Shown here piece after piece: positions 9,288 through 59,722 of a stretch of DNA of 64,000 nt. The stretch covers positions 21,820,036-21,884,035 of the forward strand of contig NC_068989.1 of assembly GCF_001194135.2 (NCBI RefSeq). The letters run 5' to 3'. Each line of letters starts with the position of its first letter. The first letter of the stretch is position 1. Below the pieces are notes generated by a model. The model ran no database searches, had not been told where the DNA came from, and saw nothing but the letters and a program-made list of their open reading frames with translations. The stretch is from Octopus bimaculoides (lineage: Eukaryota). The translations under genes and the position numbers were made by a program.

Positions 9288-9318
<31 letters not shown>

Positions 9319-9623: not shown

Positions 9624-9624
<1 letters not shown>

Positions 9625-13276: not shown

Positions 13277-13939
13277 GATGACAGGGTTTTTTTCACTATC
13301 TTTCTAAATCCAATCAAATGGCTTGGGTCAACCAGGGGTTATAGTAGAAGACATTTGCCCAAGGTCCCCTGCAGTGGCACATGGTTGGGAAGCAAACTTC
13401 ACAATCACACAGCTATGCCTGTGTCAAAATTTCCCTCTAGTTGCTAAGAAGTTAAAAAAAACAAGTATCCCTCAGATATGGAGTTAATATAATTGACTAT
13501 ATTTTCCTTCGCAATTTGTGGCCTTGTGCCAATTTTAAAAATAGTTATTCAATTATCTCGTTTTCTATTTCTTAGAATGATTTTCCGGAGAAGGAAATCG
13601 TCTGTAGGCTAAAAATGAAGATATAGATCAAGTTATTTAGCCCTAGGCAGCCCTGATTCAGCAGATCTCTGATCAAAAAGTTTTCAATTGTAACTAGACT
13701 ATCAGTTTTTATCTATGTATAGTGTACTCCAGACTACACTACCTAATACGTCCTTCCCATTTCTACTTCAGTAGCATGTGGTTTGCGGAACATTCAGCTA
13801 CTGTTTCTAACTAAATAAGCAACCAAATTGATTTAATTTTGATCAAATAAAAAGATTTATATTTTCCTGGTCTAGTAGAAGGGTCTGTACTGGTATCTTT
13901 CACTGGCCCCCTAAGACCAGCAACATGCATTGATAATAT

Positions 13940-14879
13940 TCCTCTTAAATGGTTGCAAATAGATGACTACAAATAAAATACATTCTGGGAAGGAAGGTAG
14001 AGAGAGACCTTAATGGGGAATGAGGATTTAAATGATACAGATAATGAAAGAAAGAGAAGCAAATTGGGAGTGCATAAGNNNNNNNNNNNNNNNNNNNNNN
14101 NNNNNNNNNNNNNNNNNNNNNNNNNNNNNNNNNNNNNNNNNNNNNNNNNNNNNNNNNNNNNNNNNNNNNNNNNNNNNNNNNNNNNNNNNNNNNNNNNNNN
14201 NNNNNNNNNNNNNNNNNNNNNNNNNNNNNNNNNNNNNNNNNNNNNNNNNNNNNNNNNNNNNNNNNNNNNNNNNNNNNNNNNNNNNNNNNNNNNNNNNNNN
14301 NNNNNNNNNNNNNNNNNNNNNNNNNNNNNNNNNNNNNNNNNNNNNNNNNNNNNNNNNNNNNNNNNNNNNNNNNNNNNNNNNNNNNNNNNNNNNNNNNNNN
14401 NNNNNNNNNNNNNNNNNNNNNNNNNNNNNNNNNNNNNNNNNNNNNNNNNNNNNNNNNNNNNNNNNNNNNNNNNNNNNNNNNNNNNNNNNNNNNNNNNNNN
14501 NNNNNNNNNNNNNNNNNNNNNNNNNNNNNNNNNNNNNNNNNNNNNNNNNNNNNNNNNNNNNNNNNNNNNNNNNNNNNNNNNNNNNNNNNNNNNNNNNNNN
14601 NNNNNNNNNNNNNNNNNNNNNNNNNNNNNNNNNNNNNNNNNNNNNNNNNNNNNNNNNNNNNNNNNNNNNNNNNNNNNNNNNNNNNNNNNNNNNNNNNNNN
14701 NNNNNNNNNNNNNNNNNNNNNNNNNNNNNNNNNNNNNNNNNNNNNNNNNNNNNNNNNNNNNNNNNNNNNNNNNNNNNNNNNNNNNNNNNNNNNNNNNNNN
14801 NNNNNNNNNNNNNNNNNNNNNNNNNNNNNNNNNNNNNNNNNNNNNNNNNNNNNNNNNNNNNNNNNNNNNNNNNNNNNNN

Positions 14880-14913
<34 letters not shown>

Positions 14914-15400
14914 ACACAATGGGCCTCTTTCAGTTTCTGTCTACCAAATCCATTCACAAAGCTTTGGTTAGCCCGAGGCTATAGAAGACACTTGCCCAAA
15001 GTGCCACGTAGTGGGACTGAACCTGGAACCATGTGGTTGGGAAGCAAGTTTCTTGCCACACAACCACGTGTGTGCCTATATCATTGATTGGCAATACCAC
15101 ATTGGAAGATATGAAATTTCTGTTCATGGAGCCAGTGCTGGTTTGGCGTAATGTATGTAGGATGCATATTGGTTGCTGCCATCACCTCTCATATGTTGGA
15201 AGCTAGCAGAGTCATGGAGGTTGCCTTTCTTGAGAACAAGACACGCTCTATCCTGTTTCCGAAAGAGCTTAGTACAATTGATGAAGATTATGAAGAGAAG
15301 GAGGCTTAATAACAGAAGGAATATTGAAACTGATGTATTTCTAATGTGAATGTAATATTGTGGTGTTTAGCTTTAAGTCAAAATTGATCAAATAGACCTA
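13940..15400 (-). mobile_element. CR1-like LINE relic, paralogous to 47400-48750, interrupted by a gap and a SINE C head (14920-15075)
   Basis: 13940-14078 aligns with 47400-47550. 15085-15400 aligns with 47965-48050 and 48590-48750. Confidence 0.65.
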
Positions 15401-17072
15401 AGACCATCTTTTTTATTTTTCATTTTATTTTTAGATAGCCTATCTATATTATTAGGAAGCAGCAGTAAAAGGTGACTTCAAGAAGCTGAACCTTATGAAA
15501 GCAGTAACAAAGGACAGCACAAGTAGCAAGATGCTATGCAGAAAAATGCCCTTCCAACCCATGCAAACATGGAAAAATGTATGTAAAATAATATCTAGGA
15601 CTATATTATCACCTGCATCCTTACTAAAGGAGTGTTTAAATTTACTAAGTACCAGAAGTTCACAGCATAAAAAGTTTCAGCTATTACAAAATATGTGCAG
15701 TGATTGAAGCAATATATGAAAGGATGCAAAGAATAGAGAATTCAGGATACATAAAGTGGGTTTAGACAGAGGACCAGCTTGTTATAGTAGTAATAGAAGG
15801 CAGAGACAAAGAGGAAAGTGGGTGAGATTATGGTTCAAGTACATGAGGAGAATTTGCTAAATCAGCCAAATAGCCTTCATTTTTGAGCAATGCTACCAAG
15901 GGCATTCACATATGTAGTAGTAGTATTGTTCAAGATTTCTGAGCAGTAGTCTTTCAATCATAAACATTGGGGACTTATTGAGTTAGGTGCCATTATTACA
16001 CTGTAGGCTGAATATTTGAAAGCCAATCTTTTCTGAACTTTATTCTATTCATTCCAACTGCTTTATTTTTAACTTTTGAGTGTAAATGATCTTCATCTGC
16101 TAAAAGTAGCTGGCCCAAATAAAATTCCAGCCTTGTATTTAAAAAAAAAAAAATAGGAGGCCTCAATTCTAATGCAGTTATTCAATTATTTGTCTCAAGG
16201 AAGTGTTTCTTAAGTGCATGGATGAAGTCTATAGTTTGCTGTTTTCAAAAATTCTAGCAACAGTTTTTTTCCATCTCAACATAGGTCAATTATGGGAGTA
16301 TTAAAGTTAGTCTTAATAATTCATTATTTTTATCTTACAGCATGATAATTATAAAATTATGTTAAATTCAGTTGAATATCAGTGTCAAAGTGTTTTGCTT
16401 TTTGAAAGTCAGGATGTATTGCACAAGTAAAAATGATGGTGGGACAGTGATCTAAATAAATCTAGCTGCTTGCAAGTGATTTTACACAAGGAGACAACAA
16501 ACAGGTCTCCAAACCATCAAAGATGAAATAAAAATGAATGAACATCACCATTACACATGGATCTTAAGATTAATTCTTGTGATTAGTAAAACCGTTGCTA
16601 CACTCCATGTCAATCATAATCAGGCTAATGTTCAAAGTCATTCTAGTTCGATCATATAGGCATAACATATCTAAGATTAGATTATGTTATGTAGCCATGC
16701 TCTTTTCAAGATAGCTGCGTGTAATTTGAGAGAGGTTTATTGAATGGGACAACTGAAAACAGGATCTGAGAGTAGTTCCTTGCCAACAGCATGTAATCAT
16801 AGCTCAGTCACTACTCCTATGAATTGGGTAAAAGCTTAAACAAAAGACACCAGATTTTTTACTAATAGAGGACTACCATGATACCAGCAACACAGGCATT
16901 AAAAATGGGTTTCTCTTCAGCTCTGATAGTTTAGCAACTGTTTTCTCTGTGCTACTTATAATAAGGATCACTGCTTAAGGTTAGAGCATATCACTGCCCT
17001 ATACAATAAGTTATGAATTAGACTGCTAAAATGCTTTAGAGTAGCTTCTTTAGTTTCTTTGTTTACATAACC

Positions 17073-17270
17073 CAGCATTTCTCAACTGGCATTCCCTGGA
17101 ATCCTAGGGTTCCGCAAAAGGTTTCTAGGGGATCCCCAAGAAAGAGTGAGATAAGTTAATGATAATTTCATGATCATAATATTACTATACATGCACAACA
17201 TGTTATAGGCTATTGTAATATAGACATCATCCTATCTAACCTATTATGTTATCAAAAAAATATAACCACC

Positions 17271-17305
<35 letters not shown>

Positions 17306-17475
17306 TATACATATGTATGTATGTATGTATATATGATATTTACCATGTGAACTACGATGAAAAAAATATGAGAAAGATATGGTATATAATTTTTTTTTTT
17401 TTTTTTGTGCAGGGGTTCCTTAAAACATGTAATTTATTTTAAGGGTTATGCAAGGGTAAAAAGGTTAAGAAACTG
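17073..17475. mobile_element. hAT-type MITE with internal (TA)n
   Basis: Imperfect TIRs cagcatttctcaac / gttaagaaactg. Perfect 8-bp TSD ACATAACC at 17065-17072 and 17476-17483. Confidence 0.85.
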
Positions 17476-20400
17476 ACATAACCTATGGGTGCTATATGTG
17501 TGTGCCACATATGTCGTAAAGAACAGTTTACATAATAGTTAATACCAAGATTCTTTAAGGAGGTAGGGTATGATGAGAGATTTAAGTGCTAATCTTAGCA
17601 TGTCAAATTACTTTATAGAAACATCCTTCAACACTTGAAAGGCTCTCTCATTGGTCCCTTTTAAATGTTTATGACGTTGTTTGTAATAGAAAAGTTGCCA
17701 AATTATACAAAACCTGATAGATTAGCTGTACTCCTTATTAATGGGCATATTTTCTTTGTTTTTGTCAAATATTCTAAATTAAGCCTTCAGTGAGATTTAC
17801 GCATGTGGTGCTTTAGAAATAGCATTGATATATTTGTATGTTGCACTTATAATTTAGATATTACATACAAGAAATAGGAATATCTATGTCATGTATGATA
17901 TACAATAGAGATATAGCAGGTGGAGTGGGATTACTCCCCAGGTGCAGGGGCAGTGCATAATTTTCCTCTGGTTTACCATGACTGTTAAGTAAAGCATCAA
18001 AAGAATCTCTGCTCTCAGATGCTGAGGTCTCTTAGTATGTAATTGGTATTGAGTGATTTTCTCTAAAATTGCTTGAAGTTTAGGTGTAACTACATTTGCT
18101 TACAACAGCTAAGCTGTCCTACAGCTATTTTGTAGCTTATGTATCCTCGGTTGCAAACAGACTCGTGTGGTGTTTTGAGTGATGTGAAAGGCCATAATGG
18201 TTGGAATGCTATTACAAAAACAAACAAACAAAAAAAAAACAATCTAGGAAAGTTTTATTGTAAATTATATATATTTGACTGTATGTGGTCTTCAAGGAAT
18301 GCTTGAAATAACTTTGTAATAAGTGGAAAGTGGAGAAAACAGCCCAATGTTGTTCTATTGATTCAATATTAAAAAAAAAGATAACAGTTAAAACTAAATG
18401 AGATGAGTTACAAAGTAACATAGTTTGTATATGGAAAGAAGTGTAAACTATGTGAGATGAGTGTTTAGCCCACGGAGAGCTTTGATAAGTATGGCAGTTA
18501 AGCAATAAACAGAAATTTTTTGCTTTATCATGCCAAGGTCCCAGCTGTGCATTCCAGGATGTAGTCTGACAGTTTGGACATACTGTATTCAGACCATGAT
18601 CCACTAATTCCGTCTTCTTGCAGACTTTGGTGGTGATCCCAAGAGAAATGTGGGGATGGTGGACTTGGTCAAAACATGACAGTTGCTCTTCTTTTGCATT
18701 TATTTACCAGTGTATGCAAACCAACATGTTTTTGAGAATTAGAAAAGTTATTTGATGCAACTGCCATCTGTATGTTAAGAGGAGCGGGTGTATCTTTATC
18801 AGGACCGAGTGGGAAAGATAGTATTTTGCAGACGTGTTGCGAGTGACCATGCAAAAATGAGAGGTGTTGTCAGGGATGGAATTTGATGTGACAAAAGAAC
18901 AAAAAAAAAAAAAAAAAAAAAAAAAAAGGCCCATTCATGTCCAGGTGATTACTTTGCATATTTTTGTTTCATTTTTATACATGGATTAAGCATATGGTTT
19001 GTGTGCAATCTGTGATGACACAAAATGAAGTTGGTCTTTGCAGTTTGTTATGGAGATATTAAGGTCTCAGGCAAGACTGGTAAAACTGATGATAAATCAA
19101 ATGTACACTCGTGTCTTTCTCTTATTCAAATACAGAGCTTGCAATTGCTTTTAGTGTGCATAATAAGCCTTTCACTTCTTTAACTATGATTCTATGTGCT
19201 GGGGATGATAAGGTACAGTGTGTAATTTGTAGTGACTATATTTTACATATGCAGTATTGTTATGCAGTTGAGTGTAAGAATTGTTTATATTTGGTGTTTC
19301 TGGTAAGAATTTGGTGTGTGCATTCAGATTAATTTATCAAATGTAATGCTCATTTATCTTGAAGCTACAAAATACTACTAGCTTCAAGATTTTGAGGATG
19401 TAATTGTTTATTTTTAGAATGACATTGTGAGAGGCTGGATCTGGCCAGTTTCAACATGAAACCTGTAGAATATTTGGGCTGGATATGGCTAAAGGGTTAA
19501 AGTTGGTCTGGACACCAGATTTCTAAGTAACTGATGTATGGTCAGAGTGGTTATGGGTCTTTGTCTGGAGAATTACAGGATAAAGTAGCTAAAATGTAAT
19601 GTGTATGAGACTGAATGTATGCTTTGTGGAACTGAATAGACACAAATTTATAAGACAAATTCTTGTGGTTCTAAATTCAGGAAATCACAGATTCTCAACA
19701 GCACAACTACAAGTTTGTGAGTGTTTTAGTTTTAAGGGCAAGTGTGTATTTGCCTTATTTTCAAAAGGAGCATCTGCTTAAACCAGTTCGTGTACATATT
19801 ACACCTGTCCCATTTCATGCCATATTTCTATACTTTTTGTATAGTAAAGTTTTATATTGATGCCTCAAACTGAAGGACATTCAACTGCCCATGTGTTTTG
19901 TCCAGGAAATGAAAAAAAAAAATATGTAAAACTGAATTTGATTTGAATTAATTCTGTCAATGACTATTCAGTTTTCCACTATACATTTTTTTAAAAATTG
20001 AATATTATTTATTTCCTGGAGAGCAGAGAGGTGTCTTACTGACAAACTATTGTTCCCAATCAGATCGATGGTAAGGTTACATTTGATTAGTAATATCTTG
20101 ATTTCTGTTCTTATTGGTCTTCTTCATTCTTTCTTGTCCAATACACACACAAAAAAAAAAAGAAAAAACGCACAGACACTGATCAGGTAGGTAAGGCTTA
20201 ATGTGTTCATTTAATTTTTGTGCAATATCAAAAGATGCTTTTACAGAATGGCAAAACAGAAAAAAAAAATTAATGGAATTGGTAGGGGGAGGGGTAACGA
20301 GCAATCCCTTACAATACTGTTCAACTGTTATTTTTAGCAGCAGTCATGTGCTAGCTCTGTCGGTCAGTTGCTTTTACAGTCAAAGAGTAAAATATATCTC

Positions 20401-21741
20401 GTCTTAAAACAAGATGTGAAAAAAATAATTGAAAAACAAATTATTTTCCAGATTCGCTTATTTCCATATGAATAGTGAAAAATTCAGAGTTCGATAGTAG
20501 TGATGGATTTACAAAAAGGTGAAAATTTGGTATTTTGAAGAAAACTATATTTACAGAATGGTAATTTCAGATGTATTACAAACATGACAGTTTAAAAAAA
20601 AATAATGAAAAAGAAAAAAAAAGTAGGGTTGGAGGATTAAAAATGTTAAAAGAAAAATAGCAATTATTTTTCTAGAAAGATATTTAAGAAACTCGAATAC
20701 CAAAGAACGACTATTATGGTTAAACCGAGCACTTTGTTCGGTTTAATAGTAATAGTTATTCTGAACTAATCTGAAACTTGGCTGACTATAACAATTTCAA
20801 GCTTCCAAGGTTAGGGATTTTCGGAGGTACGTTTCCTTGCAATGTAAAAAAAAAAAAAAGAAGTGCTGAAATAATCATTATTTCGCCACATCTTGTATGG
20901 GCGAACGAGCAAACTAAATTATATATTTATAACTACTTATGGTCAGCGATTTTGAGGGAAAAGAAAAACTAACACGATGTATGTGGGACTTGAACGAAAA
21001 GACGGTAGATATCAAACTACACAAATGGTCATGTATGTGCCATAAAGGGATAGAGAGATGAGATACAGTAATAGTCATTTTTTTTTCTCCAAAGGCACGT
21101 ATAGCGATGTAAGTGAACCTGTACACAAGCGAAAGTGGACAGTAGACATGGGTTAGCTAAAACAGAAATAATAGGCTATGTCGGCAACAGTTGGTTTCGT
21201 TCTAAAATGGTTTATTAAGATTCATTTATGGGGTGCATGCAAAGCAGTCAGGGAATTTCCAGAAAACAACGACGATGCCAATGCTGAAGGGAAAGGAAAC
21301 CTTTTAAACGACCAAACAACAAATCTTATATCTTTTCTATCTCGTCCCACCAACTTTTTACGGCAAAATTATAAAAGCAACATTTCACATATCTTCCATA
21401 GTAAATACAGAGATAAATACNNNNNNNNNNNNNNNNNNNNNNNNNNNNNNNNNNNNNNNNNNNNNNNNNNNNNNNNNNNNNNNNNNNNNNNNNNNNNNNN
21501 NNNNNNNNNNNNNNNNNNNNNNNNNNNNNNNNNNNNNNNNNCGAGGATACTCGGACAGTGTTTGGTGTGAAATATAAAATGAAAGTCGTGTGAGAGAGAA
21601 AACATGGTAAATGAAAAGCGAAAGGAGAGGGTAAATAGTGCATTTTTATAGACAACACGGTTACATTTAATAGTCTTGAGTGAGTTTATGTTGGCAGAAC
21701 TGAATAGGTATAGGCAGAACAAGAAACAACATTAAACATAC

Positions 21742-21798
21742 CTTGTATTTGTCAAAACCGGCAAGAATAGACGGTGTGAGACCGACTATATCAGCCAT
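21742..21798 (-). CDS. Candidate first coding exon, 19 codons (MADIVGLTPSILAGFDKYK), phase-0 donor; product unknown
   Basis: caagATGGCT start context (YY1-like AAGATGG) and donor AAG|gtatgt. CpG-rich surroundings and a CCAAT box 62-66 bp upstream. The start is duplicated at 52558. Confidence 0.55.
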
Positions 21799-21900
21799 CT
21801 TGATAGAGCAGACAATATTGTAAATGCGAGCGTTTGATCGGTAATATATGCTCTATTGACCAATCAGAGATGCCGTTGCAAAAGACTGTTGGGATTTATG
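21799..21900 (-). promoter_or_regulatory. Candidate promoter: CCAAT box (21860-21864) plus a GA-rich tract upstream
   Basis: attgaCCAATcaga in CpG-containing sequence next to the ATG exon. A purine-rich GAGA tract follows at 21900-22200. Confidence 0.45.
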
Positions 21901-22225
21901 CAATGACGGATAGAGAGGCAGTGAATGGGATGGACGATATGAAGACATAGAGGGGGAAGAGAAGGAAGCAGAGAGAGAGATTAAAAAAAGAGATAGAGAG
22001 AAAACGAACGGGAGAATAGAAACAAAGCATGAAAGACAGACAGGGGGGGAGAGAAGTGAAGCAGAGAGACAGAGAGAGAGGGACTACGTATATGAAGAAA
22101 TAGAAGAAAAAGAAATAAAAAGTGTGAGACAGGTATTTAGTCAATGAAACGAGGGAAAGAACGAGATACAGCGGAAGTAAACAAAAACGTACAATGAAGG
22201 GGTGTGTGTGTTTATACGCGCAAAC

Positions 22226-23526
22226 AATTAGGACCAATATAAAGATCCTCACCAGTTAACGAAAACAAAAAATAAACCCCAGCCTGCTGGGTGTTAACAA
22301 CTGTGTAGAAAACGAATATGAAAAAAAAAATTGCACAAACGAACCTAGGGGTGGGGAGATCACAAGATCTTCAGATTCTCCATAGCCGAAAACATGGGAT
22401 TCCGTAAAAAAAAAAATAAAAAAAAAATCAATATATATCCATTTTTCTGAAAGTTAGGGAAAAATCGGAGGAGGTTTCTGATTTGGCGGGCGCCACTTTT
22501 TATTTAAAATTTTCTCAATAACACTAAAGGTGCACATTTTATAGGGGGAATCGCATGACCGTGATATGTAGAATACATTATCGAAAGCGAAAATCGCCAA
22601 AATGAAAAAATAAAAAAGTTACAGCGGTTTTCCCAGTGTCTAAACCCAATGTGCATCACACTAAGAGTAAAAGATGTTTTGTATGACACATTCTACCAGT
22701 GTACCAAGTTTGAAAATGTTTCGATAAGAAACGTTAAGAAAACAAGTAGCGCCCGCCAAATCAGAAAGATCCGCATCTGATTCTGAAAAAAAATTTGTTT
22801 GTAAAAAAAATTCAATTTTTCAACAAACAAAAAAAAAATGTCCCAACCCCCTCCCAATTCTACGGCCTTGGCCTTCGAGCAGGCTACCCACATGCTAGAA
22901 ATAACAGCCAAATCTCACAAAACTGCGATAACATAATGAAAGAAATATGTAATCAATCTACTCACCTTTCTGCAAAAATTTCTTTCAGAGTAATTTCCCG
23001 CAGTAATATGACAAAGTAATTCATGTGAAATTAAAGTGTTTATTTTTTATATTTTTTTGTTTTGTTTTGAAAGTTACAAAAAATATGAGTACAGAAATAA
23101 CAGCAAGCTCTTTTGAAAAAAGAAAAGTAAAAATAGCAAAGAAATACTGTGACAAAGTGAAATTAAAGAGAATCATTTGACCAGCGCAAAACATCGTGTG
23201 TTTGTGGAACTGAAAATGGCCTTGCTCATTTGAGATTTGGCTGTTATTTCTAGCATGTGGATAGCCTGCTTGAAGGCCAAGGTCGTAGAATTGGGAGGGG
23301 AGGTTGTTGCGTTTATTTTATTTATTTATTTTTTAATATATATCCATTTTCCTGAAAGTTATGAGGGGGAATTGGGTCTTGTGAATTTTCCGAAAGTCCT
23401 CTCCCCACCCCCAGAGTCGTTTGCGCAAATTGATTTTTTTTTTTTTTTTTTTTTTTTCATATTTGTTTTCTACACAGCAGGTTTTGTTTTCGTTAACGGA
23501 TGAGGATCTTTATATTGACCACAATT
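22226..23526. repeat. 1.3-kb foldback structure with three pairs of inverted repeats
   Basis: Outer arms 22226-22367 / 23377-23526. Perfect 19-bp IR 22475-22493 / 22749-22767. ~75-bp IR 22844-22917 / 23231-23306. Confidence 0.8.
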
Positions 23527-25429
23527 AGTGTTCGATAAAACAGATGTGTAACGAAATACTTGACACACCAATAATTTAATGTCCGATTTCATTGTAAAAA
23601 AAATATTAAATATGCAAATTTTAGTTTACTCAAATCTGTAATATACGTGGGTTGATAAGCAATGCATTGGTGGATAGTTACAGGTGGTACACTGCTGCAG
23701 CAGGAAACTCCTAAGAATCGAAACGAATTTACAGCTGTTAGCCTTATCCCAACACCGACTTTTTTTTTCGGTCTGAACAAATATTGTGCAGACGAATTGT
23801 TTATAATCGTCCTAACATTACCAGTTGGCTAAAAAGGAAAAAAATCCATCCTCATCAGCATCATCAAAGAAATTCCAGAAGCCTGGAAAATAGTTACATG
23901 AAAGATATTGAGAACGATTCCAGCTTATAAAATATATTCCAATAGCTACTATCACTGTAGCAATAATAATTATTATTCCAGTGAGGCATGAGGTTTTTTT
24001 TGGGGGGGGGCGTATAATTTACGAAAAAAAAAGAAAATCTGTTAGAATCATCAAAAGGTTTCATTTCATTTGAAGTTCATGAGAAAAAAAAATTTCTCAA
24101 ATGAAAAAAAGTAGCGTGTACGGTTTATATCAATGAGTTTGTATTTCTCACAAAACCTATGGAAGATGGAAAAACAGAAACCAAAAACCATTATTTTCTG
24201 TAAATCTTTCTGCATTGCATTTTATAGTCATTGAAATTTAAAGTTGTGATTATCTCCCTTGTCATTTTTAACAAGAATTAGTCATTTGGAAAATTACTAT
24301 TCTCATCACAATTTTAAAATATCTCACCTTACAACATCAAGTATATTAGCAACAACTAAACTATTAAATCTATTTTACAGTTTCTTCAGCTACTAGACAA
24401 AACAATAGAATTTAAAAACAAGCAATAAAAAGGTGTATGGACATGACAGAATATATAGACTTCACACAATGAGAGTGCATGCGGCAAGGCAGTTATCATT
24501 CCATCTTTATTCAAATGGTATATCGATAGAAACATTATCTAATGGGTTAGCTTTTTTTTTTTTTCATTAAATATGTGAAGAGGGATTTGGTTGTTGTTTC
24601 TAATAGGTTGCACTCTGACATAGTGACTCCTCCACAAGGGTCATTGTGTTTACCATTATGTTCAGCATGAAAATGAGACAGTGAGAGCTGTGATGGAAAT
24701 ATGTAACACTAGTACAGGGCCTCAATTTTAGTGGGTAGGAGAAGACAATTTAACTGAATCAATATTTGCCTGGTTCTCCCTTTTATTATCCAGCAGAAAG
24801 ATGCATATTAGAGGTGACTTCAGCAGAATTCGAATAAAGAAATATATCCAAATAACAAAAGGCATTCTATTCACTTGTCTAAGGATTCTGTTAATCCAGT
24901 TCCTCTTGACGAAAGAAAAATGCCAAAAGAGAAACTGCGAGAAAGAGTAATGCATTGTCTTAAGCAAGAAAAGAACAGAGGCTTCCTTAAATATCAAAAC
25001 TCTTCAAGATATGTGAAGTGTGATGCAAGTTGGAAAGAAAAAAAAAAACCTTAGAAAACAAGAAAAGTCAAAGTTTATAAGGAATGGTTGACTGACAGAG
25101 CTCCCTTCCCTCGCCAAGAGGAAAAGGTCAGAAGTGGGAGCTGAGAGGTAAAGAATGGCAATTGGATAAAGAGAGTATAGTACAATCCAGTAAAAGCCAG
25201 TTTTAAATGTGTGTGTGCATTTAGTTATAATAAAAACTATTTTACATTAATCTGATGGGTTACTCTATACTTTTGTAAAGTACAAATTTATATTCATAAA
25301 TGAGAATGTTGTTGGCAGTGATTTTGAAGTTTCAACCAGTTAAGCCATGATCAGACTGTGATGTATTAGAGTTAGTCTTATATATTTTTGCTCCCATTTT
25401 TATACATAAATATATACACACCTATATCA

Positions 25430-26040
25430 GCCCCACTTTAGCATATATCTCAAACAGAATTGAACAAACAGCAAACAAACTCTACCTCCACGAAACAGGA
25501 AGGTTAAAATCCCTATATACTAATCAAATTGCTTATAGAACAATGTTAAAGAGAAACATAAACATACAACCTTTACTCAAATATTTTTGTGAACATAAAG
25601 GCACAAAAGAAACAACTTTCAATACTAACGAAGTCATGACATGCCTGATTAATCACCCCAACCTTACAAATGAAAACAAGAAATATCCTAAATATCAACA
25701 TGATTAGCCTAAATTTACCACCTACATACTTTTGAAAAATAAGTTGACACACCCAATTCCTAAGGGCTTAAATACTGGACTTTGTACCTTTGGCCCTTAC
25801 ATTGTCAAAACAAATTATTAAATCCACCAAAATCAATAAAAAATACTGTCATACCTCATGCTTACCTAACAAAAGAGAAACTACATACGTGTTTACAAAG
25901 TTCAACGTGCATTGATAAATTCTAAACAATAACCCCAAATTTAATCAAAATGTTTCCAAAACACCTTTCCATAATAAACCATGAAAACTTAATTACCACC
26001 GCACTCAACATAGACTATATAAAGGCAAAACTAACTCTAA
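25430..26040 (+). mobile_element. Possible decayed L1-like LINE 3' fragment
   Basis: Strong A/C strand bias and broken frames containing KYCHTSCLPNKRETTYVF, reminiscent of the C-terminal Cys/His motif of L1-clade ORF2. Confidence 0.35.
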
Positions 26041-26889
26041 TGCATTGCAGTGTGATGATGATTTAGCTGGCCGAAACTTCAGAGTCACTCTTAACATTCT
26101 TGTTTAAGAATAAGTTTCTGATCTTTGCCTTGAGGAAATGTATAACATAATTACTTCTAAATTGATATTATTGAATTGTAAAAGTAATTTTACAATGAAA
26201 TGTTCTCATAAATATAGAACATTTAAATATTTCAATACTAAATAACCCATCAATTATGATTGCTTTTCCTACAAACTGATAGGCATAATTTTTCTAAAAC
26301 ATTTCTTAGCATATTTAATTGATAGAAAACTAATTGTCATGACATAGGATTTCTATGTTCCTATTCATTCATTACATACTGACGTCATCAAAAGTTAAAT
26401 ATTAAACTGGATTTTCTTAAAATATTATATTTCTTCTTCACATTTATTTTTGCATGCATTCATTTATTAGAGATATTTTCTAAGTTCACTTTTAATTTAA
26501 AGTATTTTGAATTGCTTTGATAATCTGTGTTTGCATATATTTTCAGATGCATTAATTTGACTGGTATAAAATACCAGTCAAATTAACATAACTTTTTCTG
26601 TATCTAAATATGTTGACACAATAGAAATGATAGTTGGTAATGTATGGTGCAATCATCAATTAAAGATGTGATTTTCTCCTTTCTTATTTTTGTTGTCTTA
26701 TACTCTGAATTTCTTGAAATGATATTTGGATTTACTTTGCCATACATGAAGAATTATCTTGAATGTTTATTCTATTTGCATTTATTGTTATCTGATTGTT
26801 GGATATAGTTAACCAAATTCATTTAACACCTCATGCTTTATAGATATCTGCCTGGATTTATTAATCCCTTTTACTTCTTGATATCTATA

Positions 26890-27697
26890 TGAGAGCTGAT
26901 CACACGGTAAAGCCACTTGGTACAGATTGACCTTGTATTCTGCTGTGCATGTGCACTAAGTTTTAATGTTCTAGCTCACTTCCACTGTTTACAACAGTGC
27001 TTCAAAGGAACATGTGTAGTGTGTGATCATGACACTGACCATGACAGAGAAAATTGAGCAGAGAATCTGCATCAAATTTTGCCAAAAGTTTGGCAATACC
27101 TGCTCAGAGTCCAATGCAAAGTTTTCAAAAGGTTTTCATCGTTCTCAACACAATCAAGATCTTGTGCAACTGAAACCTCGAGTGTCTTTTTGGTCAGCTG
27201 AAAACAGTTTTGACACATATCTCATACCCAAATCTTCAGTGATAATGGACTGAACTGAACCGTAACTAATCTGCACATCCTCTGATAACTCACAGCTGCA
27301 TGCACATTTGCAATGTTTTTCTCAGTTCTGCTGGTTGCAGGTCTCCCAGAACGTTCATCGATATCAACATTTTTTCAGCCATCTACGAAACGTCTGAACC
27401 ACTCGTACACTTGTGTGCAGCTCATACACTTCTCTTCATACACTTTCTGCAACTTTGTGTAGGCCTCTGAGCAGGTACTGCCATGACAACTTTCTCTGTC
27501 ATGTTCAATGCAACAATCACATACTACACACCTTCCTTCCAAGCAGTGTTGTAAGAAGCAGCAGTGAGCTAAAATATCAAAACTTAGTGCACATGCACAG
27601 CAGAGTTCAAGGTCAATTTGTGCCGAGCAGCTTTACTCTGCATTCTTTAGCTTCGTTACTATGGCAACAGTCCGGACACTTATTGATCAGCAAGCGC
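26890..27697. mobile_element. Non-autonomous mariner derivative with the 5' end present at both termini
   Basis: The plus arm encodes MTEKIEQRICIKFCQK. The minus arm encodes ...YTKLQKVYEEKCMS..QVYEWFRRF..DIDERSGRP. The two leaders are reverse complements, with TIR-like tgagagctgatca / tgatcagc. Confidence 0.85.
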
Positions 27698-27736
27698 GCA
27701 CATGTGTGTGTGTGTGTGTTTGTGTGTGCGTGCGCG

Positions 27737-27772
<36 letters not shown>

Positions 27773-28363
27773 CCCCAGAGGGGATTAACACACATTACTG
27801 ATAGCATATATAATAATACTACAGTTGGATCCAGAGAAAAGATATCTAATGATGGCATGACAGTACTAATGATGGTTCTTTCATATGTAATTACATTGCT
27901 ACAGATCCTGGAAGATATAGTCAATTGTAATATTTAATATATGATTGTTACTTGATCAAACATGAAAAGATGAAAGGCAAAAGGCCATTATGTAACTTAG
28001 AGGGAGAGGACAGAGTACACAGTACTCAACCAGTAACTTTGTCTTATAAACACAGATGAGATTGAAGCAAAGATCATAAATGGTCATAACTAAATTAGCA
28101 CATGACCAATTTTGCCAATCCACTGCCCTTCCTTCATTCATTTTTACATCAGTTTTTCTGATAGTATGGGTTAGACAAATATGTTGCTGAGGCATTGTTA
28201 TACAAATAGATACTCTTCCTGACACTAATTTTCAGTTGGTTTGTATCCCACATGGCTTAAGAAGTACAAAGCAAAGGAACAGTTTATTGACAGAGGTACC
28301 AACAACAATGCCATCCAATTATGATTTTCATAAAAGAAAGCACAGATATAAAACACAAGCACA

Positions 28364-28413
<50 letters not shown>

Positions 28414-28416
<3 letters not shown>

Positions 28417-28556
28417 GACTTCTTTTTAATTTCTATCTGCCAAATTCACCCAGGGCTTTGGCTGACCCATGGCTACAGTTGAATATACATGCCTCATGTG
28501 CCATACAGTTGGACTCAACCTGAAACCGCATGGTTGAGAAATGATACAACCATACC
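28414..28556 (-). mobile_element. SINE C head preceded by (CA)n
   Basis: ttctatctgccaaattcacccagggctttggctgaccc...gcatggttgagaa. Confidence 0.65.
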
Positions 28557-28791
28557 TGTAACTATTCATTTATGTTAACAAAGACAAGAACTGAAGATAG
28601 ACATTACGAAACAACTGAACAATAGTATTATAAATTCAGTGAAGCTTTTTTTTAGCAGGTATACATATACACAAACATACATACTCAGTAATAACCTGAA
28701 GTCAAAACGCAAAGTTTTGAAACTAAAAGCTACTCCTTACCAGTTTTAAAACTGGTAAGGAATAGCTTTAGGCATCTCACAAGATAACCAA

Positions 28792-29010
28792 TATTCTTTT
28801 CTACTCTACGCATAAGGCCCGAAATTTTTGGGGAGGGGGGCCAGTCGATTACATCAACCCCAGTATGCAACTGGTACTTAATTTATCAACCCCGAAAAGA
28901 TGAAAGGTAAAGTCAACCTCAGCGGAATTTGAACTCAGAACATAAAAACAGATGAAATACTGCTAAGCATTTCGCCCGGCATGCTAACGCTTCTGCCAGC
29001 TAACCACCTT
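28792..29010 (-). mobile_element. SINE family A, full length with TSD
   Basis: Complete head-to-tail copy flanked by the 13-bp direct repeat ACAAGATAACCAA (28779-28791, 29011-29023). Confidence 0.9.
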
Positions 29011-29208
29011 ACAAGATAACCAACATTAAAACATTGACTCGAATCAACAGTCAATATAAATAGACAATATTATGCTATTTCCATTATAGTATAATATTTT
29101 ATAGCACACTACAATATTATACTATTTCTATTCAGACAGTAACGTGAATAGTTAAGTTAGTGTTAACATAGTTAATGTAGCTGAAAAGCAAAAATCCAGT
29201 TAAAAGTA

Positions 29209-29640
29209 CAGATATGGGTTGAAAAGTTCATAGAGTGACTCTGAAGGTAGAGCTATGGAATCTTGCATGCATTCATTTCAGCTCTCTTATATATAACTGC
29301 ATTGCTTCTTTCCAGGTAAACTGACACCTGACTGTTCAAAGAAGGCTTTAAAAGTAACTAGTAGCGACTTGAAAATGGACAAAATATGGCATCATAATGT
29401 TATCAAAATATGGCATCATAGTGTTATCAAGTACCAGCAGAAAAAGAGTTTGGCCCCCAAGGACATTCATGCTGACATGCTTGCTACATTAGAGGATGAC
29501 ACGCCATCTTTATCAACAGTGCAAAAGTGGGTAGCTGAATTTAGGAGGTGAAGGCAGAGTTTTACAGATGATCCAAGATCTGGACGACCTGCAGCTTCCA
29601 CCACCGAGGAAAACAATGAATGTGTTCACCTCATATTTGA
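29209..29640 (+). mobile_element. Mariner 5' fragment (N-terminal HTH region)
   Basis: MDKIWHH..VIKYQQKKSLAPKDIHADML...STVQKWVAEFRR*...DDPRSGRP. It starts after TA with a TIR-like gggttgaaaagttc. Confidence 0.8.
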
Positions 29641-30438
29641 TGAAGAAATACAGGAGGCATGGTTCAGTTTTGATAGACTTTCTCAGCAAAGCAGAGAAAG
29701 TCTAACAAGTCTTATAATATTGGACATAAGTAATTGTGAAAAATTAGCTGATTTAAGAAAATTATCATTGATGTTAGTCACTGAAGGAGTAATATGAATA
29801 ATCCTATTAGGTAGGGTAGATAAGAGTGTAAATCAGGAAGCCTAATCAAGCAATGATCAACCTGAGACACTATGTTCAAGAATGGTGTGATCTTTTTTTT
29901 ATGCAAGTCAGTTTATCGTGACTTTTGAACTCTAAACAATGAACATGATTAAAAAAAAATCTCTAAAGCTTCCCCTTTTGTAAGATATTTTTGCTCATTA
30001 GACTTTTCATTAGTAAGTTATGAATTAGTCAAGTGTATTCAGGAGTACATGAACACACATATGTGGGTGATATACAGACACATATGAGTCATTAACGGGT
30101 TTTAAAATAATTATATATAACATGTGATGTGCAATCTTTCACAATCATCAAATTTTTTTTTTATTTTTAGATGATTTAAAACTGTTGAATGGTGCACAGA
30201 AACATCTTCGAAGTTAAATGAACAATATCCAGTTCATAATTTCTTAGTTTTGAAACTACATCACACATTTTACACCGTATATACGTTATATCAATTCTCA
30301 GTCTGTAACATGAATCAGCTAATTAGGTAAAATTAAATATTTGCACAGTCAGTACCTTGGGAAGTACCCTCTACTGTAGCCCTGGGCCAACCAAAGCCTT
30401 ATGAGTAGATTTAGTAGACAGAAACCTACAGCAGCTCA

Positions 30439-30476
<38 letters not shown>

Positions 30477-49724: not shown

Positions 49725-50035
49725 GCATATCATCATCATTGTTTAACACCCATTGTCCATGTTGGTATGGGTTGGACAGTTTAACCAGGGCTGGTAAGCT
49801 GAGGGGCTGCAACAGACTCCAGTCTGATTTGGAATGGTTTCTACAGCTGGATGCTCTTCCTAACGCCAACCACTCCAAGAGAGTAATGGGTGCTTTTTCA
49901 TGCCACCGGCACGGGTGCCAGTTGCATGACACCAGTATCTGCCACATCTACGATTTCACTTGGCTTGATGGGTCTTCTTCACAAGCACAGCATATTGCCA
50001 AAGGTCTCCATCATTTGTCATTGCCTCCATGTGTA
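49725..50035 (-). mobile_element. Family D RTE-like 3' end
   Basis: catcatcattgtttaacac...ggatgctcttcctaacgccaacc. Confidence 0.75.
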
Positions 50036-50267
50036 AGTGGATATTAAGGACAAAAAGGATTTTGACACAAAATTACAAGCTGAATATTTAAGTGTTTATT
50101 TATATCTGTTTATGGCCCTTATCTTAACCTAAAGTTGTAGATAAATGTGAAACTCCTATGAAAAACAGGTTCTCAAATATGAAAATTGTAATTAACCACC
50201 AACTCTTACCTAAGTTTAACAACAAAAATTTAGGGACTAGATTTTATTAACACAACGAATTATTCTT

Positions 50268-50794
50268 TTATTCTTTTACTTGTTTCAGTCATTTGACTGT
50301 GGCCATGCCGGAGCCCCAACTTCAGTTGAACAAATCAACCCCAGGACTTATTCTTTGTAAGCCTAGCGCTTATTCTAACAGCGTGTAAACACACCAACGC
50401 CAGTTGTCAAGTGATGGGCAGACAGACAGACAGACACAAAGATACACACACACACACGTGTGTGTGTGTGTGAAGGTGCGTAGCTTAGTGGTTAGGGCTA
50501 TTCGGCTCACGATTGGAAGGTCGTGCGTTCGATGCCAGGCGACGCGTTGTGTCCTTGGACAAGACACTTAATTTCACGTTGCTCCAGTCCACACAGCTGG
50601 CAAAAATGAGTAAAATCTGTATTTCAAAGGGCCAGTCTTGTCACACTGTGTCACGCTGAATCTCCCCGAGAACTACGTTATGGGTAAACGTGTCTGTAGA
50701 GTGCTCAGTCACTTACAAGTTAATTTCACGAGCAAACTGTTCCGTTGATCGTATCAGTCGGGACCCTCGTCGTCGTAATGGACGCACTGCTCCT

Positions 50795-50837
<43 letters not shown>

Positions 50838-50995
50838 GACCGCTCTTCTTTCAGTTTCCGTCAACCAAATCCACTCATAAGGATTTGGTCGGCCCTAGGC
50901 TACAGTAGAAGACACTTGACCAGGTTGCCACGCACTGGGACTGAACCTGGAACCATGTGGTTGGATAGCAAGTTTCTTACCACACAGTCACATTA
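50268..50995 (-). mobile_element. SINE C split by a nested SINE B2
   Basis: Tail 50268-50445, head 50835-50995, with the insertion lying inside the internal microsatellite. Confidence 0.85.
50472..50783 (+). mobile_element. tRNA-derived SINE family B2 (CORE-like middle, 3' half shared with B1)
   Basis: Head gtagcttagtggttagg...gttcgatgcc and gtgtccttggacaagacactt. Tail caaagggccagtcttgtcacactgtgtcacgctgaatctccccgagaactac... is shared with B1. Confidence 0.85.
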
Positions 50996-52546
50996 TATCA
51001 GCTTTCCTTTGAGATCGTTAACCTTTCGTTCAATCTTCTCAGGGGAAAGGGACACTGTAAGTGAACCCCTTCTCCGAGCCAAACGTATCATGGACAGAGA
51101 GAAAAGAATGCCCCCCCCCACCCAATACTTAACAGGTACTTTATCGAACTTGGAAGAATGAAACGCAAGGTGACCTAACCGGGATTTAAACTCCAAGCGC
51201 AGCGAATGGATATCGTGAGGCAATTCTTGTTGACACTCCTCCAACACCTCGGCCTATCCGCCACCTTATTCATTTTCTCTTGCCATTCATAATCATTTTC
51301 TCTTCCTTTCGAAGTATTCATTTCAATTATACTGTACCGCTCCGAGAGATCTCTTTCTCGATCGTTGTTTGTGTAGCCTAGGTTCAGTTACGATGGAGCA
51401 AGCTTAGAGAGATGGTAGGGTGAAATAGGAAGGAAATTTGTCTATCTGTAACAGTTTCAACGACCAGGTTAAGGAATCATTCGTATGTTCGTTTCCTTGG
51501 AATGTAAAAAGGGGCTAAAAGAGTCCAACTAGGTTATGAAATTACCTCTATTTTATTGTAACTTGTATGGTTGAACGAGAGAACTAAATGGTGCATTATT
51601 ACAATATGGTTAGCGATTCTGAACATAGGTATCAAACTACAAGAAACAAAGTATATAGCTCGGTGCTCTCTTGCGCCTGACACCCATCTGACGGTCAGGT
51701 ATGTGTTATAAAGGGACAGAGAGATGAGATCTAGAAATAGTCACGTTTTCTTTTTCAAAACAATGCATGTATAGCAATGTAAGTGAATCGATACTCAAAG
51801 AAGCGAAAGTGGACAGCAGATAAGGGTTAGCTAAAACAGAAATAATAGGCTATGTCGGCAACAGTTGGTTTCGTTCTAAAATGGTTTATTAAGATTCATT
51901 TATGGGGTGCATGCAAAGCAGTCAGGGAATTTCCAGAAAACAACGACGATGCCAATGCTGAAGGGAAAGGAAACCTTTTAAACGACCAAACAACAAATCT
52001 TATATCTTTTCTATCTCGTCCCACCAACTTTTTACGGCAAAATTATAAAAGCAACATTTCACATATCTTCCATAGTAAATACAGAGATAAATACATTCAC
52101 GAGAAAATAAAGGAAAAATGCTTGGTCGTTANNNNNNNNNNNNNNNNNNNNNNNNNNNNNNNNNNNNNNNNNNNNNNNNNNNNNNNNNNNNNNNNNNNNN
52201 NNNNNNNNNNNNNNNNNNNNNNNNNNNNNNNNNNNNNNNNNNNNNNNNNNNNNNNNNNNNNNNNNNNNNNNNNNNNNNNNNNNNNNNNNNNNNNNNNNNN
52301 NNNNNNNNNNNNNNNNNNNNNNNNNNNNNNNNNNNNNNNNNNNNNNNNNNNNNNNNNNNNNNNNNNNNNNNNNNNNNNNNNNNNNNNNNNNNNNNNNNNN
52401 NNNNNNNNNNNNNNNNNNNNNNNNNNNNNNNNNNNNNNNNNNNNNNNNNNNNNNNNNNNNNNNNNNNNNNNNNNNNNNNNNNNNNNNNNNNNNNNNNNNN
52501 NNNNNNNNNNNNNNNNNNNNNNNNNNNNNNNNNNNNNNNNNNNNNN

Positions 52547-52670
52547 TATATCAGCCATCTTGATAGAGCAGACAATATTGTAAATGCGAGCGTTTGATCG
52601 GTAATATATGCTCTATTGACCAATCAGAGATGTCGTTGCAAAAGACTGTTGGAATTTATGTAAAGATGGA
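52547..52670 (-). promoter_or_regulatory. Second copy of the candidate promoter and start codon (ATG at 52558; the rest of the exon lies in the gap)
   Basis: Identical to 21787 onward for ~86 bp, including the CCAAT box. Confidence 0.45.
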
Positions 52671-52880
52671 GAGAGAAATATAGAGATGGAAGAGAGAGAG
52701 AGAAAGAGAGAGTAAGTGAGAGAGTAGTAGTAGCAGAGGAAAAGACTAAAGAAAAACGTGACACAAACACGCGCACATACATATTTTATATATATAGTCA
52801 GCAGAAGTTATAGTGACTGAAGGATTGTGTGGTACTACTAAAGCAGCACGGTCCCGAACGCGCAGCCGCGCGTCCGCGCC

Positions 52881-59708: not shown

Positions 59709-59722
59709 ATGTATGTATGTGT

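What the first reader, a model, noticed from the sequence alone, without database searches (positions are those of the whole stretch)
21150..21895. Near-identical promoter/exon-1 core inside an old duplication: recent gene conversion or assembly artefact
21150-21420 and 51824-52094 (271 bp) are identical as far as I can read them, and 21787 onward matches 52547 onward for ~86 bp. The immediately adjacent homologous flank (20770-21150 versus 51430-51824) is heavily diverged. The switch is abrupt, at gggttagc. The identical tract includes putative intron sequence, so purifying selection alone is an unlikely cause. This suggests that the regulatory 5' end of two paralogues was selectively homogenised. 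Both copies contain an N-gap inside the core, so mis-scaffolding of one contig is a real alternative.
Basis: partly seen in the sequence, partly recalled or inferred. Interest (0 to 1): 0.7.

Follow-up and report, generated by a model that had tools for sequence, protein, structure and literature searches.

The report
Gene-conversion patch between two old duplicates
Two old, badly decayed copies of a non-coding-looking stretch of an animal genome share a roughly 0.7 kb patch that is letter-for-letter identical, most likely because one copy was recently pasted over the other by ordinary gene conversion; it is real in the sequence but unremarkable, and only new sequencing reads can prove it.

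Summary
Window 21150-21420 equals 51824-52094 (271/271) and 21787-21872 equals 52547-52632 (86/86). The homologous flanks next to the tract are only 84-86% identical ignoring indels. A run of 357 identical sites was never reached in 20,000 permutations (longest 82).

The two copies belong to an old direct duplication (about 2.9-21.9 kb and 43.5-52.7 kb) that has decayed to 69-81% identity, with no sign of coding exons.

Each copy supplies what the other's gap hides. The patch is at least 639 bp long, or 723 and 809 bp using the gap estimates.

The best explanation is non-crossover interlocus gene conversion, probably recurrent. Mis-scaffolding of one contig is disfavoured. All four flank-to-core junctions lie inside contigs, the contig ends differ between copies, and the flanks share no exact word longer than 19 bp. 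Collapse of a few real differences cannot be excluded.

"Promoter" is plausible: both copies lie in CpG-undepleted islands and carry a consensus CCAAT box. "Exon 1 of two paralogues" is not supported. Neither candidate ORF has any homologue, and no Pfam or Rfam family fits.

This is an ordinary phenomenon in a draft assembly, so interest is low.

The parts
21150..21420 (.). Copy A, left part of the identical tract (271 bp); its contig ends at 21420
   Evidence: Identical to 51824-52094, 271/271, with a mismatch at the next base to the left
21421..21541 (.). Assembly gap inside the tract in copy A (121 N, length estimated)
   Evidence: Copy B supplies at least 37 bp of it, and the flanking contig ends do not overlap
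21542..21872 (.). Copy A, right part of the tract. 21542-21786 cannot be compared because it falls in copy B's gap. 21787-21872 is identical to copy B
   Evidence: 86/86 identity with 52547-52632. 21542-21786 has no other copy in the window
51824..52131 (.). Copy B, left part of the tract (271 bp identical, plus 37 bp that extend into copy A's gap)
52132..52546 (.). Assembly gap inside the tract in copy B (415 N, length estimated)
52547..52632 (.). Copy B, right part of the tract (86 bp), at the start of a contig only 499 bp long (52547-53045)
20773..21149 (.). Copy A, diverged left flank, homologous to 51433-51823. The best-conserved blocks hold a TATA-like CATAAAG (21041-21047; TATAAAG at 51707-51713 in B) and a GTAAGT (21109-21114)
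   Evidence: 68-78% identity with indels, 79-84% without. Motifs were read directly from the sequence and not tested statistically
51433..51823 (.). Copy B, diverged left flank
21873..21916 (.). Copy A, right shoulder (86% identical to 52633-52676), followed by GA-rich low-complexity sequence where homology is lost
52633..52676 (.). Copy B, right shoulder
21858..21867 (+). Consensus CCAAT box GACCAATCAG (on the other strand, the Y-box CTGATTGGTC), 5 bp inside the right edge of the tract. The same motif is at 52618-52627 in copy B
   Evidence: Read directly from the sequence. The match to the NF-Y consensus is from general knowledge, and binding was not tested
21178..21420 (+). Candidate orphan ORF (ATG 28 bp inside the tract), open for 81 codons into the gap. 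In copy B it runs 51852-52131, 93 codons
   Evidence: Open-frame P is about 0.01-0.02, but 8% of equal-sized windows do as well. No homologue, Pfam or PDB match. AlphaFold pLDDT is 55.8
21742..21798 (-).
   Evidence: No database protein shares even three 5-residue words with it
20001..24000 (.). CpG-undepleted island (observed/expected 0.65-0.96, against a background of 0.1-0.3) that contains copy A
50001..52131 (.). CpG-undepleted domain (observed/expected 0.78-0.95) that contains copy B. It is interrupted by gaps and resumes at 54 kb
13487..14078 (.). Largest collinear block of the old duplication (81% identical to 46954-47549). Other blocks: 2946-3296/43523-43887, 5119-5347/44250-44474, 15086-15171/47966-48056, 15250-15380/48613-48737
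   Evidence: All carry frameshifting indels and show no codon periodicity

Best explanation
The window holds two direct copies, about 30.7 kb apart, of an old segmental duplication that has otherwise decayed to 69-81% identity and has been broken up by transposon insertions. Within it, one patch of at least 639 bp (about 0.72-0.81 kb by the gap estimates) was overwritten in one copy with the sequence of the other. The mechanism would be non-crossover interlocus (ectopic) gene conversion: a break in one copy is repaired using the paralogue as template. The result is a patch with no differences, bounded on both sides by sequence that keeps the old ~15% divergence.

The last event is recent. Patch divergence is at most 0.84% (95% bound), which is no more than about 5% of the age of the duplication.

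Conversion between ~85% identical DNA is very inefficient. The likeliest history is therefore repeated conversion that never let this segment diverge, a self-maintaining island of identity longer than the ~200 bp needed for efficient recombination, rather than one late event.

The patch lies in germline-unmethylated, promoter-like chromatin (a CpG-undepleted island with a CCAAT box). Such regions are break-prone in many animals, which would explain its position without invoking selection.

Shown: the identity, the sharp boundaries, the diverged flanks on both sides, the contig anatomy and the CpG pattern. Inferred: conversion as the mechanism, its recurrence, the promoter function and the break-hotspot explanation.
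For: Exact identity of 271 + 86 bp with a mismatch immediately outside. Flanks are 84% (left) and 86% (right) identical on both sides, so this is a patch and not a crossover product. 0 of 20,000 permutations reach the 357-site run. The Jukes-Cantor distance is 0.168 for the flanks and at most 0.0084 for the tract.

Collinear diverged blocks show an old duplication of 9-19 kb.

Contig anatomy argues that both loci really carry the tract. The four flank/core junctions are inside contigs, the contig ends differ between copies, and the tract is not a free-standing contig. The flanks share no exact word longer than 16 or 19 bp.

Two independent gap-size estimates give similar tract lengths, 723 and 809 bp.

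The two tract gaps touch no simple repeat, unlike five of the other seven gaps. Contigs are expected to break inside a two-copy repeat that is longer than the reads or library inserts.

The tract length is within the published range for interlocus conversion: median 198 bp, mean 385 bp, up to kilobases (PMC3790853); 50 to several hundred bp (PMC3924818).

Both copies lie in CpG-undepleted islands. There is no match to plasmids or phages, so no sign of foreign sequence.
Against: No reads, depth or second assembly were available, so the physical existence of two identical copies is not proven. Both copies are interrupted by gaps exactly in the tract.

Inside a two-copy repeat an assembler extends contigs with reads from both copies, so a few true differences could have been merged into one consensus. 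'100%' may really mean 'at least about 97-99%'.

Background identity of ~85% (78% counting indels) is at the low edge for conversion. Rates in yeast are about 1000-fold lower at 83-85% than at 99% (PMC3924818), and converted human paralogues average 96% identity (PMC3790853).

The middle of the tract cannot be compared between copies: A's 245 bp lie in B's gap and B's 37 bp lie in A's gap. A continuous tract is therefore assumed. The window shows at least one definite scaffolding artefact (the 102-bp duplicate across gap 11675-12245).
Confidence: 0.65

Rival explanations
1. Assembly artefact in the strong sense. Only one locus truly has this sequence, or the second has a core as diverged as its flanks. 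The assembler or gap-closer extended the second locus's contigs with reads or a contig from the first.
For: Both copies have a gap inside the tract, and the right part of copy B sits on a 499-bp contig held only by scaffolding. The same scaffold has a proven artefact, 102 bp duplicated across gap 11675-12245. No independent assembly could be found.
Against: The tract is joined to diverged, locus-specific flank within contiguous sequence at all four junctions. The contig ends are not the same in the two copies, so one contig was not simply used twice. Outside the tract the copies share no exact word longer than 19 bp, so there is no shared k-mer path for a chimeric join at exactly the homologous position on both sides. 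If the true second core were ~15% diverged, it would have assembled as unique sequence. The gap-based length estimates of the two copies agree to within 86 bp (723 vs 809).
Confidence: 0.15
2. Extreme purifying selection. The tract is an ultraconserved functional element (a promoter core or a small gene) that has simply not changed in either copy since the duplication, with no sequence exchange.
For: The tract lies in promoter-like CpG islands and contains a consensus CCAAT box (sequence). It also holds an open 93-codon frame.
Against: There are zero differences in 357 sites with razor-sharp edges, while adjacent sequence is ~15% diverged with many indels. If the ORF is real, its synonymous sites would also have to be frozen. 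If it is not, most of the tract has no detectable function: no RNA family, no structure signal (z-scores 0.19 and 0.51), and no protein homologue.
Confidence: 0.05
3. The tract is a young mobile or multi-copy element that landed in both loci, or one member pair of a larger repeat family elsewhere in the genome.
For: The window is rich in transposons and SINE-like repeats. The rest of the genome could not be searched.
Against: Homologous, diverged flank runs right up to both edges of the tract in both copies. An insertion would therefore have had to hit exactly the same site twice, or to predate the duplication, in which case it would be as diverged as the flanks. No terminal inverted repeats or target-site duplication are visible at the edges. 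There are only two copies in 64 kb and no match in the viral or metagenome collections.
Confidence: 0.05
4. Another recombination route gave the same patch: a double unequal crossover, or replication-based template switching between the copies.
For: The end product, an internal patch of identity with both flanks diverged, is the same as for conversion. Complex multi-template repair has been proposed for some human cases (PMC3790853).
Against: Two crossovers within about 0.8 kb between ~85% identical direct repeats are far less likely than one non-crossover repair. Nothing in the sequence, such as microhomology junctions or inserted bases at the edges, calls for template switching.
Confidence: 0.05

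Closest known systems
Interlocus (non-allelic) gene conversion tracts in segmental duplications, e.g. the human survey in PMC3790853 and the review PMC3924818
   Same: A contiguous stretch is far more similar than its homologous flanks and is detected by the same run-length logic as GENECONV. The copies are intrachromosomal and tens of kb apart. The tract length of 0.64-0.81 kb is within the reported range (median 198 bp, mean 385 bp or 1364 bp depending on method; 50 to several hundred bp in experiments).
   Different: The background identity here is ~85% (78% with indels), well below the ~96% typical of converted human duplicates and at the edge of what experiments show to be efficient. No gene is identified, and no outgroup or population data are available.
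Human fetal G-gamma/A-gamma globin genes (classic case, recalled from general knowledge and not checked here)
   Same: These are tandem old duplicates in which the 5' part is near-identical and identity stops abruptly, with simple-sequence DNA near a boundary. Here GA-rich low-complexity DNA follows the right edge in both copies.
   Different: The globin case involves well-defined coding genes and was confirmed by cloning individual chromosomes. Here there is no confirmed gene and only a gapped draft assembly.
Duplication and collapse artefacts in draft assemblies (gap-flank duplicates, collapsed repeats reused in scaffolds)
   Same: Identical sequence abuts N gaps. The same scaffold contains a true example at 11573-11674 / 12246-12347.
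   Different: The tract is not repeated across a single gap, is not a free-standing contig, has different contig ends in the two copies, and is fused to locus-specific diverged flanks at all four junctions.
Non-methylated (CpG) island promoters with an NF-Y CCAAT box
   Same: There is a sharp local rise of CpG observed/expected to about 0.8-1.0 in a strongly depleted background at both copies. GACCAATCAG is present inside the tract.
   Different: There is no elevated G+C (36-38%), no transcript or transcription-start evidence, and no downstream exon with any homologue.

Membership tests
Interlocus gene conversion tract | Two paralogous loci in one genome, with homologous sequence on both sides of the tract | tested here: met
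   Left flanks 20773-21149 / 51433-51823 and right shoulders 21873-21916 / 52633-52676 align. Collinear older blocks reach back to 2946 / 43523.
Interlocus gene conversion tract | A contiguous segment significantly more similar than the rest of the alignment (GENECONV-type criterion) | tested here: met
   The run is 357 identical sites, against a maximum of 82 in 20,000 permutations of 148 differences over 820 columns.
Interlocus gene conversion tract | Divergence resumes on both sides (a patch, not a crossover product) | tested here: met
   84% identity on the left and 86% on the right immediately outside the tract.
Interlocus gene conversion tract | Tract length within the known range (tens of bp to a few kb) | tested here: met
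   At least 639 bp; 723 bp (A) and 809 bp (B) with the gap estimates, compared with PMC3790853 and PMC3924818.
Interlocus gene conversion tract | Donor and recipient similar enough for homologous repair (usually above 80% identity, with about 200 bp of near-identity) | tested here: inconclusive
   Flanks are 84-86% identical ungapped and 78% gapped, which is borderline (PMC3924818). The condition is satisfied only if the core was kept similar by earlier conversions.
Interlocus gene conversion tract | Tree incongruence: in the tract the copies group by species, in the flanks by locus | not testable with these tools
   No related genome was available. Scans of metagenome and viral collections found nothing.
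Assembly false duplication / collapsed repeat | The identical sequence touches contig ends or gaps | tested here: met
   Gaps 21421-21541 and 52132-52546 lie inside the tract.
Assembly false duplication / collapsed repeat | The duplicate is a free-standing contig bounded by gaps, or the same sequence repeated across one gap | tested here: not met
   The tract pieces are continuous with unique flanks. Only 11573-11674 / 12246-12347 shows the across-gap pattern.
Assembly false duplication / collapsed repeat | The same contig is used twice, so the ends are identical in both copies | tested here: not met
   The left contigs end at core positions 271 (A) and 308 (B). The right contigs start 245 bp apart.
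Assembly false duplication / collapsed repeat | Read depth and spanning reads inconsistent with two copies | not testable with these tools
   No reads were available.
Promoter with first exon of a protein-coding gene | Germline-unmethylated CpG signature at the site | tested here: met
   CpG observed/expected is 0.65-0.96 at 20-24 kb and 0.78-0.95 at 50-52 kb, against a background of 0.1-0.3.
Promoter with first exon of a protein-coding gene | Core promoter motifs | tested here: inconclusive
   The CCAAT box GACCAATCAG (21858-21867, 52618-52627) and a TATA-like motif in the left flank were read from the sequence. No enrichment test is possible on single short motifs.
Promoter with first exon of a protein-coding gene | An exon whose product has relatives, or paralogous coding exons downstream | tested here: not met
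   There is no homologue of either candidate peptide. No Pfam hit was found on copy A's minus-strand ORFs. The conserved blocks have frameshifting indels and no third-position bias.
Promoter with first exon of a protein-coding gene | Transcript or transcription-start evidence | not testable with these tools
   No expression data were available.
Known structured RNA gene | Match to an Rfam family or tRNA, or unusually stable folding | tested here: not met
   No Rfam hit even at E up to 1. No tRNA. Folding z-scores are 0.19 and 0.51.

The most novel reading that the evidence does not exclude
The patch is a self-maintaining island of concerted evolution confined to a promoter core (CpG island with a CCAAT box) and/or a small unannotated orphan gene. 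It would have been kept identical in two otherwise decayed duplicates by recurrent conversion, with selection favouring identical regulation or product. That would be a case of regulatory-element homogenisation surviving long after the surrounding duplication has eroded to ~85% identity.
Probability: 0.12. Interest if true: 0.45.

Novelty: new member of a known kind. Interest (0 to 1): 0.2.

Why it matters
If real, this is one more example of interlocus gene conversion. It has one mildly instructive feature: a perfectly identical ~0.7 kb island persists in duplicates whose remaining sequence is at the lower limit of identity for homologous repair. That argues for recurrent, hotspot-like conversion in open, unmethylated chromatin.

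In practice it warns annotators that divergence-based dating of this duplication would be wrong inside the tract. It also warns that the two gaps are repeat-induced and need long reads. It does not open a new question.

Tried and rejected
(1) Known RNA gene or intronic snoRNA: no Rfam hit at gathering threshold over the whole window, none at E up to 1 over 20500-22300, and no tRNA. Folding is no better than shuffles on either strand.

(2) The + strand ORF (93 codons) as a conserved protein: no Pfam hit apart from a sub-threshold BAH match at E 0.074. No PDB hit and no hit among 5.8 billion proteins. The exhaustive phmmer search against 1.84 billion representatives gave two hits, both translated tandem repeats that score by summing 7-12 copies of a short chance match. 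The AlphaFold single-sequence model has pLDDT 55.8 and pTM 0.26, which is uninformative. The open frame itself is weak evidence (P 0.01-0.02; 8% of windows do as well).

(3) The minus-strand 'exon 1' peptide: no candidate in the database shares three 5-residue words with it.

(4) Coding exons elsewhere in the old duplication: a six-frame A-versus-B blastp comparison gave only simple-repeat or SINE matches and the blocks that also match at DNA level. Codon-position and indel analysis was negative. A Pfam scan of concatenated minus-strand ORFs from 12.2-21.8 kb was negative.

(5) Independent assemblies of the tract: two metagenome scans and one viral scan returned 0 hits.

(6) Foreign or vector sequence: no match in plasmids or phages.

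(7) Transposon insertion: rejected, because homologous flank abuts both edges in both copies and there are no terminal repeats.

(8) Allelic haplotypes mis-scaffolded in tandem: rejected, because the flanks are 70-85% identical with many indels and the copies are separated by about 30 kb of unrelated sequence.

(9) GC-biased conversion footprint: the tract's G+C (35-38%) equals that of its flanks, so there is no signal.

(10) Not done: the third large protein search, on a pseudo-protein of all ORFs in the 20-24 kb island (built). I judged it too unlikely to succeed for its cost. The Pfam call on raw frames failed because of stop codons, and one permutation script timed out and was rerun.

Full report
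OBSERVATION. The finding is accurate. Window 21150-21420 and 51824-52094 are identical at all 271 positions, and the base immediately to the left already differs. 21787-21872 and 52547-52632 are identical at 86 positions. After that there are 6 mismatches in 44 bp, and alignable homology ends near 21916/52676, where both copies run into GA-rich low-complexity DNA. The left flank, 20773-21149 against 51433-51823, is clearly homologous but decayed. It is 68-78% identical counting indels and 79-84% ignoring them, with 19 separate indels.

Chance is excluded. Even at 7% divergence, 357 identical sites have P = 6e-12. When the 148 differing columns of the 820-column alignment are permuted, the longest identical run in 20,000 trials is 82, against 357 observed.

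THE GAP. The program asked for continuity across 21421-21541 to be tested first. The window has nine gaps. The one at 11675-12245 is false: the same 102 bp sit on both sides, so two contig ends overlapped and were not merged. The gap in this finding is different, because its sides share nothing. Copy B reads 37 bp further (52095-52131) into what is N in copy A, so at least 37 bp are truly missing there. That extension does not overlap copy A's next contig. Conversely, copy A's 21542-21786 (245 bp) lies inside copy B's gap of 415 N. The copies are therefore complementary.

If the tract is continuous it is at least 271+37+245+86 = 639 bp. With the gap estimates it is 723 bp in A and 809 bp in B, two independent estimates that agree to within 86 bp. 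Continuity and reading frame across the gap cannot be established. On the + strand, all three frames close within 16 codons after the gap.

CONTEXT. The two copies are part of a much larger and older direct duplication. Collinear blocks at 69-81% identity run through 2946-3296, 5119-5347, 13487-14078, 15086-15171, 15250-15380 and 20773-21916 in copy A. Their counterparts in copy B are 43523-43887, 44250-44474, 46954-47549, 47966-48056, 48613-48737 and 51433-52676. Dispersed repeats lie between the blocks.

The window is animal DNA with 37% G+C. It is rich in microsatellites, SINE-like repeats and dead transposons: pogo DDE_1, a mariner transposase and a retroelement integrase.

WHAT THE UNIT IS. 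I found no evidence for a protein-coding gene.

It shares no three 5-residue words with any of 5.8 billion proteins.
- On the + strand, an ATG at 21178 (28 bp inside the tract) opens a frame that stays open through the whole core, for 81 codons in A and 93 in B. This is only weakly unusual (P 0.01-0.02; 8% of windows of this size do as well). It has no Pfam, PDB or database relative. The two hits of the exhaustive search are translated tandem repeats, and the fold prediction is poor.
- None of the conserved blocks of the old duplication has a coding signature: frameshifting indels are everywhere and mismatches show no third-position excess. The minus-strand ORFs of copy A hit no Pfam family.
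- There is no Rfam family, tRNA or excess RNA structure.

What does stand out is methylation history. The window as a whole is strongly CpG-depleted (observed/expected 0.46, typically 0.1-0.3). Copy A sits in a sharply bounded 4-kb island at 20.0-24.0 kb (0.65-0.96), and copy B sits at the edge of another from 50.0 kb (0.78-0.95). The tract also carries a textbook CCAAT box, GACCAATCAG, at 21858-21867 and 52618-52627.

A promoter-like, germline-unmethylated region is therefore a reasonable reading. 'Exon 1 of two paralogous genes' is not demonstrated, and even the transcribed strand is open.

ARTEFACT OR BIOLOGY. The contig anatomy argues against it.

- The contigs are 14880-21420, 21542-32079, 45638-52131 and 52547-53045. 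The gaps therefore fall inside the tract, and each of the four junctions between locus-specific diverged flank and identical core lies within contiguous sequence.
- The contig ends are not the same in the two copies (core position 271 against 308 on the left; 245 bp apart on the right). One contig was therefore not pasted in twice.
- Outside the tract the copies share no exact word longer than 16 bp (left) or 19 bp (right). An assembler had no shared path on which to cross between loci at exactly the homologous point on both sides.
- Five of the other seven gaps abut microsatellites or telomere-type repeats. The two tract gaps abut none. That is what one expects if contigs were extended inward from unique flanks into a two-copy repeat longer than the reads or inserts.
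- The tract matches nothing in plasmid or phage collections.

The assembly cannot guarantee exactness. Inside the repeat, reads from both copies are pooled, so a handful of true differences could have been merged. That would change '100%' to 'very high', not the conclusion that identity jumps at the boundaries.

MECHANISM. A patch of identity with old divergence on both sides is the signature of non-crossover interlocus gene conversion. A single unequal crossover would homogenise everything on one side of it. The Jukes-Cantor distance is 0.168 in the adjacent flanks and at most 0.0084 (95% bound) in the tract. The last event therefore falls within the most recent ~5% of the duplication's history.

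The literature gives a caveat and a refinement. Conversion is mostly seen above 80% identity, drops about a thousand-fold at 83-85% relative to 99%, and works efficiently only with about 200 bp of near-identity (PMC3924818). Converted human duplicates average 96% identity (PMC3790853). A first-ever conversion between ~85% identical sequences is thus unlikely.

More plausibly, this segment has been converted repeatedly and never diverged, while its surroundings escaped. The slightly higher identity of the shoulders (84-86%, against 70-81% further out) fits varying endpoints of earlier events. Open, unmethylated chromatin as a break-prone site would explain why the island is where it is. That last step is inference.

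COMPARISON AND VERDICT. The tract length (0.64-0.81 kb) is within the published range: median 198 bp, mean 385 bp, up to kilobases. The closest classical parallel, recalled from general knowledge, is the fetal globin gene pair with its abrupt conversion boundary.

This is a new instance of a well-known process, seen in a gapped draft assembly, with no identified gene attached. I rate gene conversion at about 0.65, a strong assembly artefact at about 0.15, and the remaining alternatives at about 0.05 each. Interest is low. Long reads or flank-anchored PCR would settle the matter.

Noticed in passing
window 11573-11674 and 12246-12347 (gap 11675-12245): The same 102 bp occur on both sides of a 571-N gap. 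The two contig ends overlap and were not merged, so this gap is false and its stated length is meaningless.
   Followed up: yes
window 52888-53039: A palindrome-like element lies 270 bp right of copy B. A (CCCAAC/CCCTAA)n run and a 12-unit (GGGTTA)n run face each other, bracketed by inverted arms GTCGTGAGTGGTCGATC / GATCGACCACTCACGAC. A very CpG-dense stretch (52850-52885) precedes it. It abuts gap 53046-53966. This could be a head-to-head interstitial telomere-type repeat or a telomere-repeat-carrying mobile element.
   Followed up: partly
window 54001-63000: A 9-kb domain is not CpG-depleted (observed/expected 0.6-1.18). It coincides with transposon ORFs (pogo DDE_1 at 56587-57117, minus strand) and repeat copies, so these may be young, not yet deaminated insertions or an unmethylated domain.
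   Followed up: no
window 9135-9276, 14880-15067, 30370-30473, 32831-33068, 46097-46274, 50800-50990: A SINE-like dispersed family of about 140-190 bp at 78-84% identity, often next to (AT)n or (AC)n microsatellites and contig ends.
   Followed up: no
window 2006-2260, 5755-5999, 11024-11187, 41713-41967, 49715-49922: A second dispersed repeat family (about 160-260 bp, 75-91% identity, both orientations).
   Followed up: no
window 22848-22917 and 23231-23300: An inverted repeat with 70-bp arms (95.7% identical, about 310 bp apart) inside copy A's CpG island. It could be a MITE-like element or a hairpin. A second, older inverted pair lies at 26907-27056 / 27487-27636 (81%).
   Followed up: no
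window 9276-9624 and 17260-17340: A long compound TA/CA-type minisatellite array with internal periodicity (self-matches at offsets of 48, 72, 96 bp and so on). A related short array lies at 17.3 kb.
   Followed up: no
window 7252-7635 (-), 63060-63994 (-), 59165-59518 (-): Transposon remnants: a mariner-type transposase fragment (Pfam Transposase_1) and a retroelement ORF with a weak integrase zinc-binding match, plus further long ORFs with no family assignment.
   Followed up: partly
window 40220-40574 and 59720-60074 (also 50617-50778): A 355-bp repeat pair at 92% identity is the next most similar long repeat in the window after the finding's tract. A third, partial copy lies just left of copy B.
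   Followed up: no
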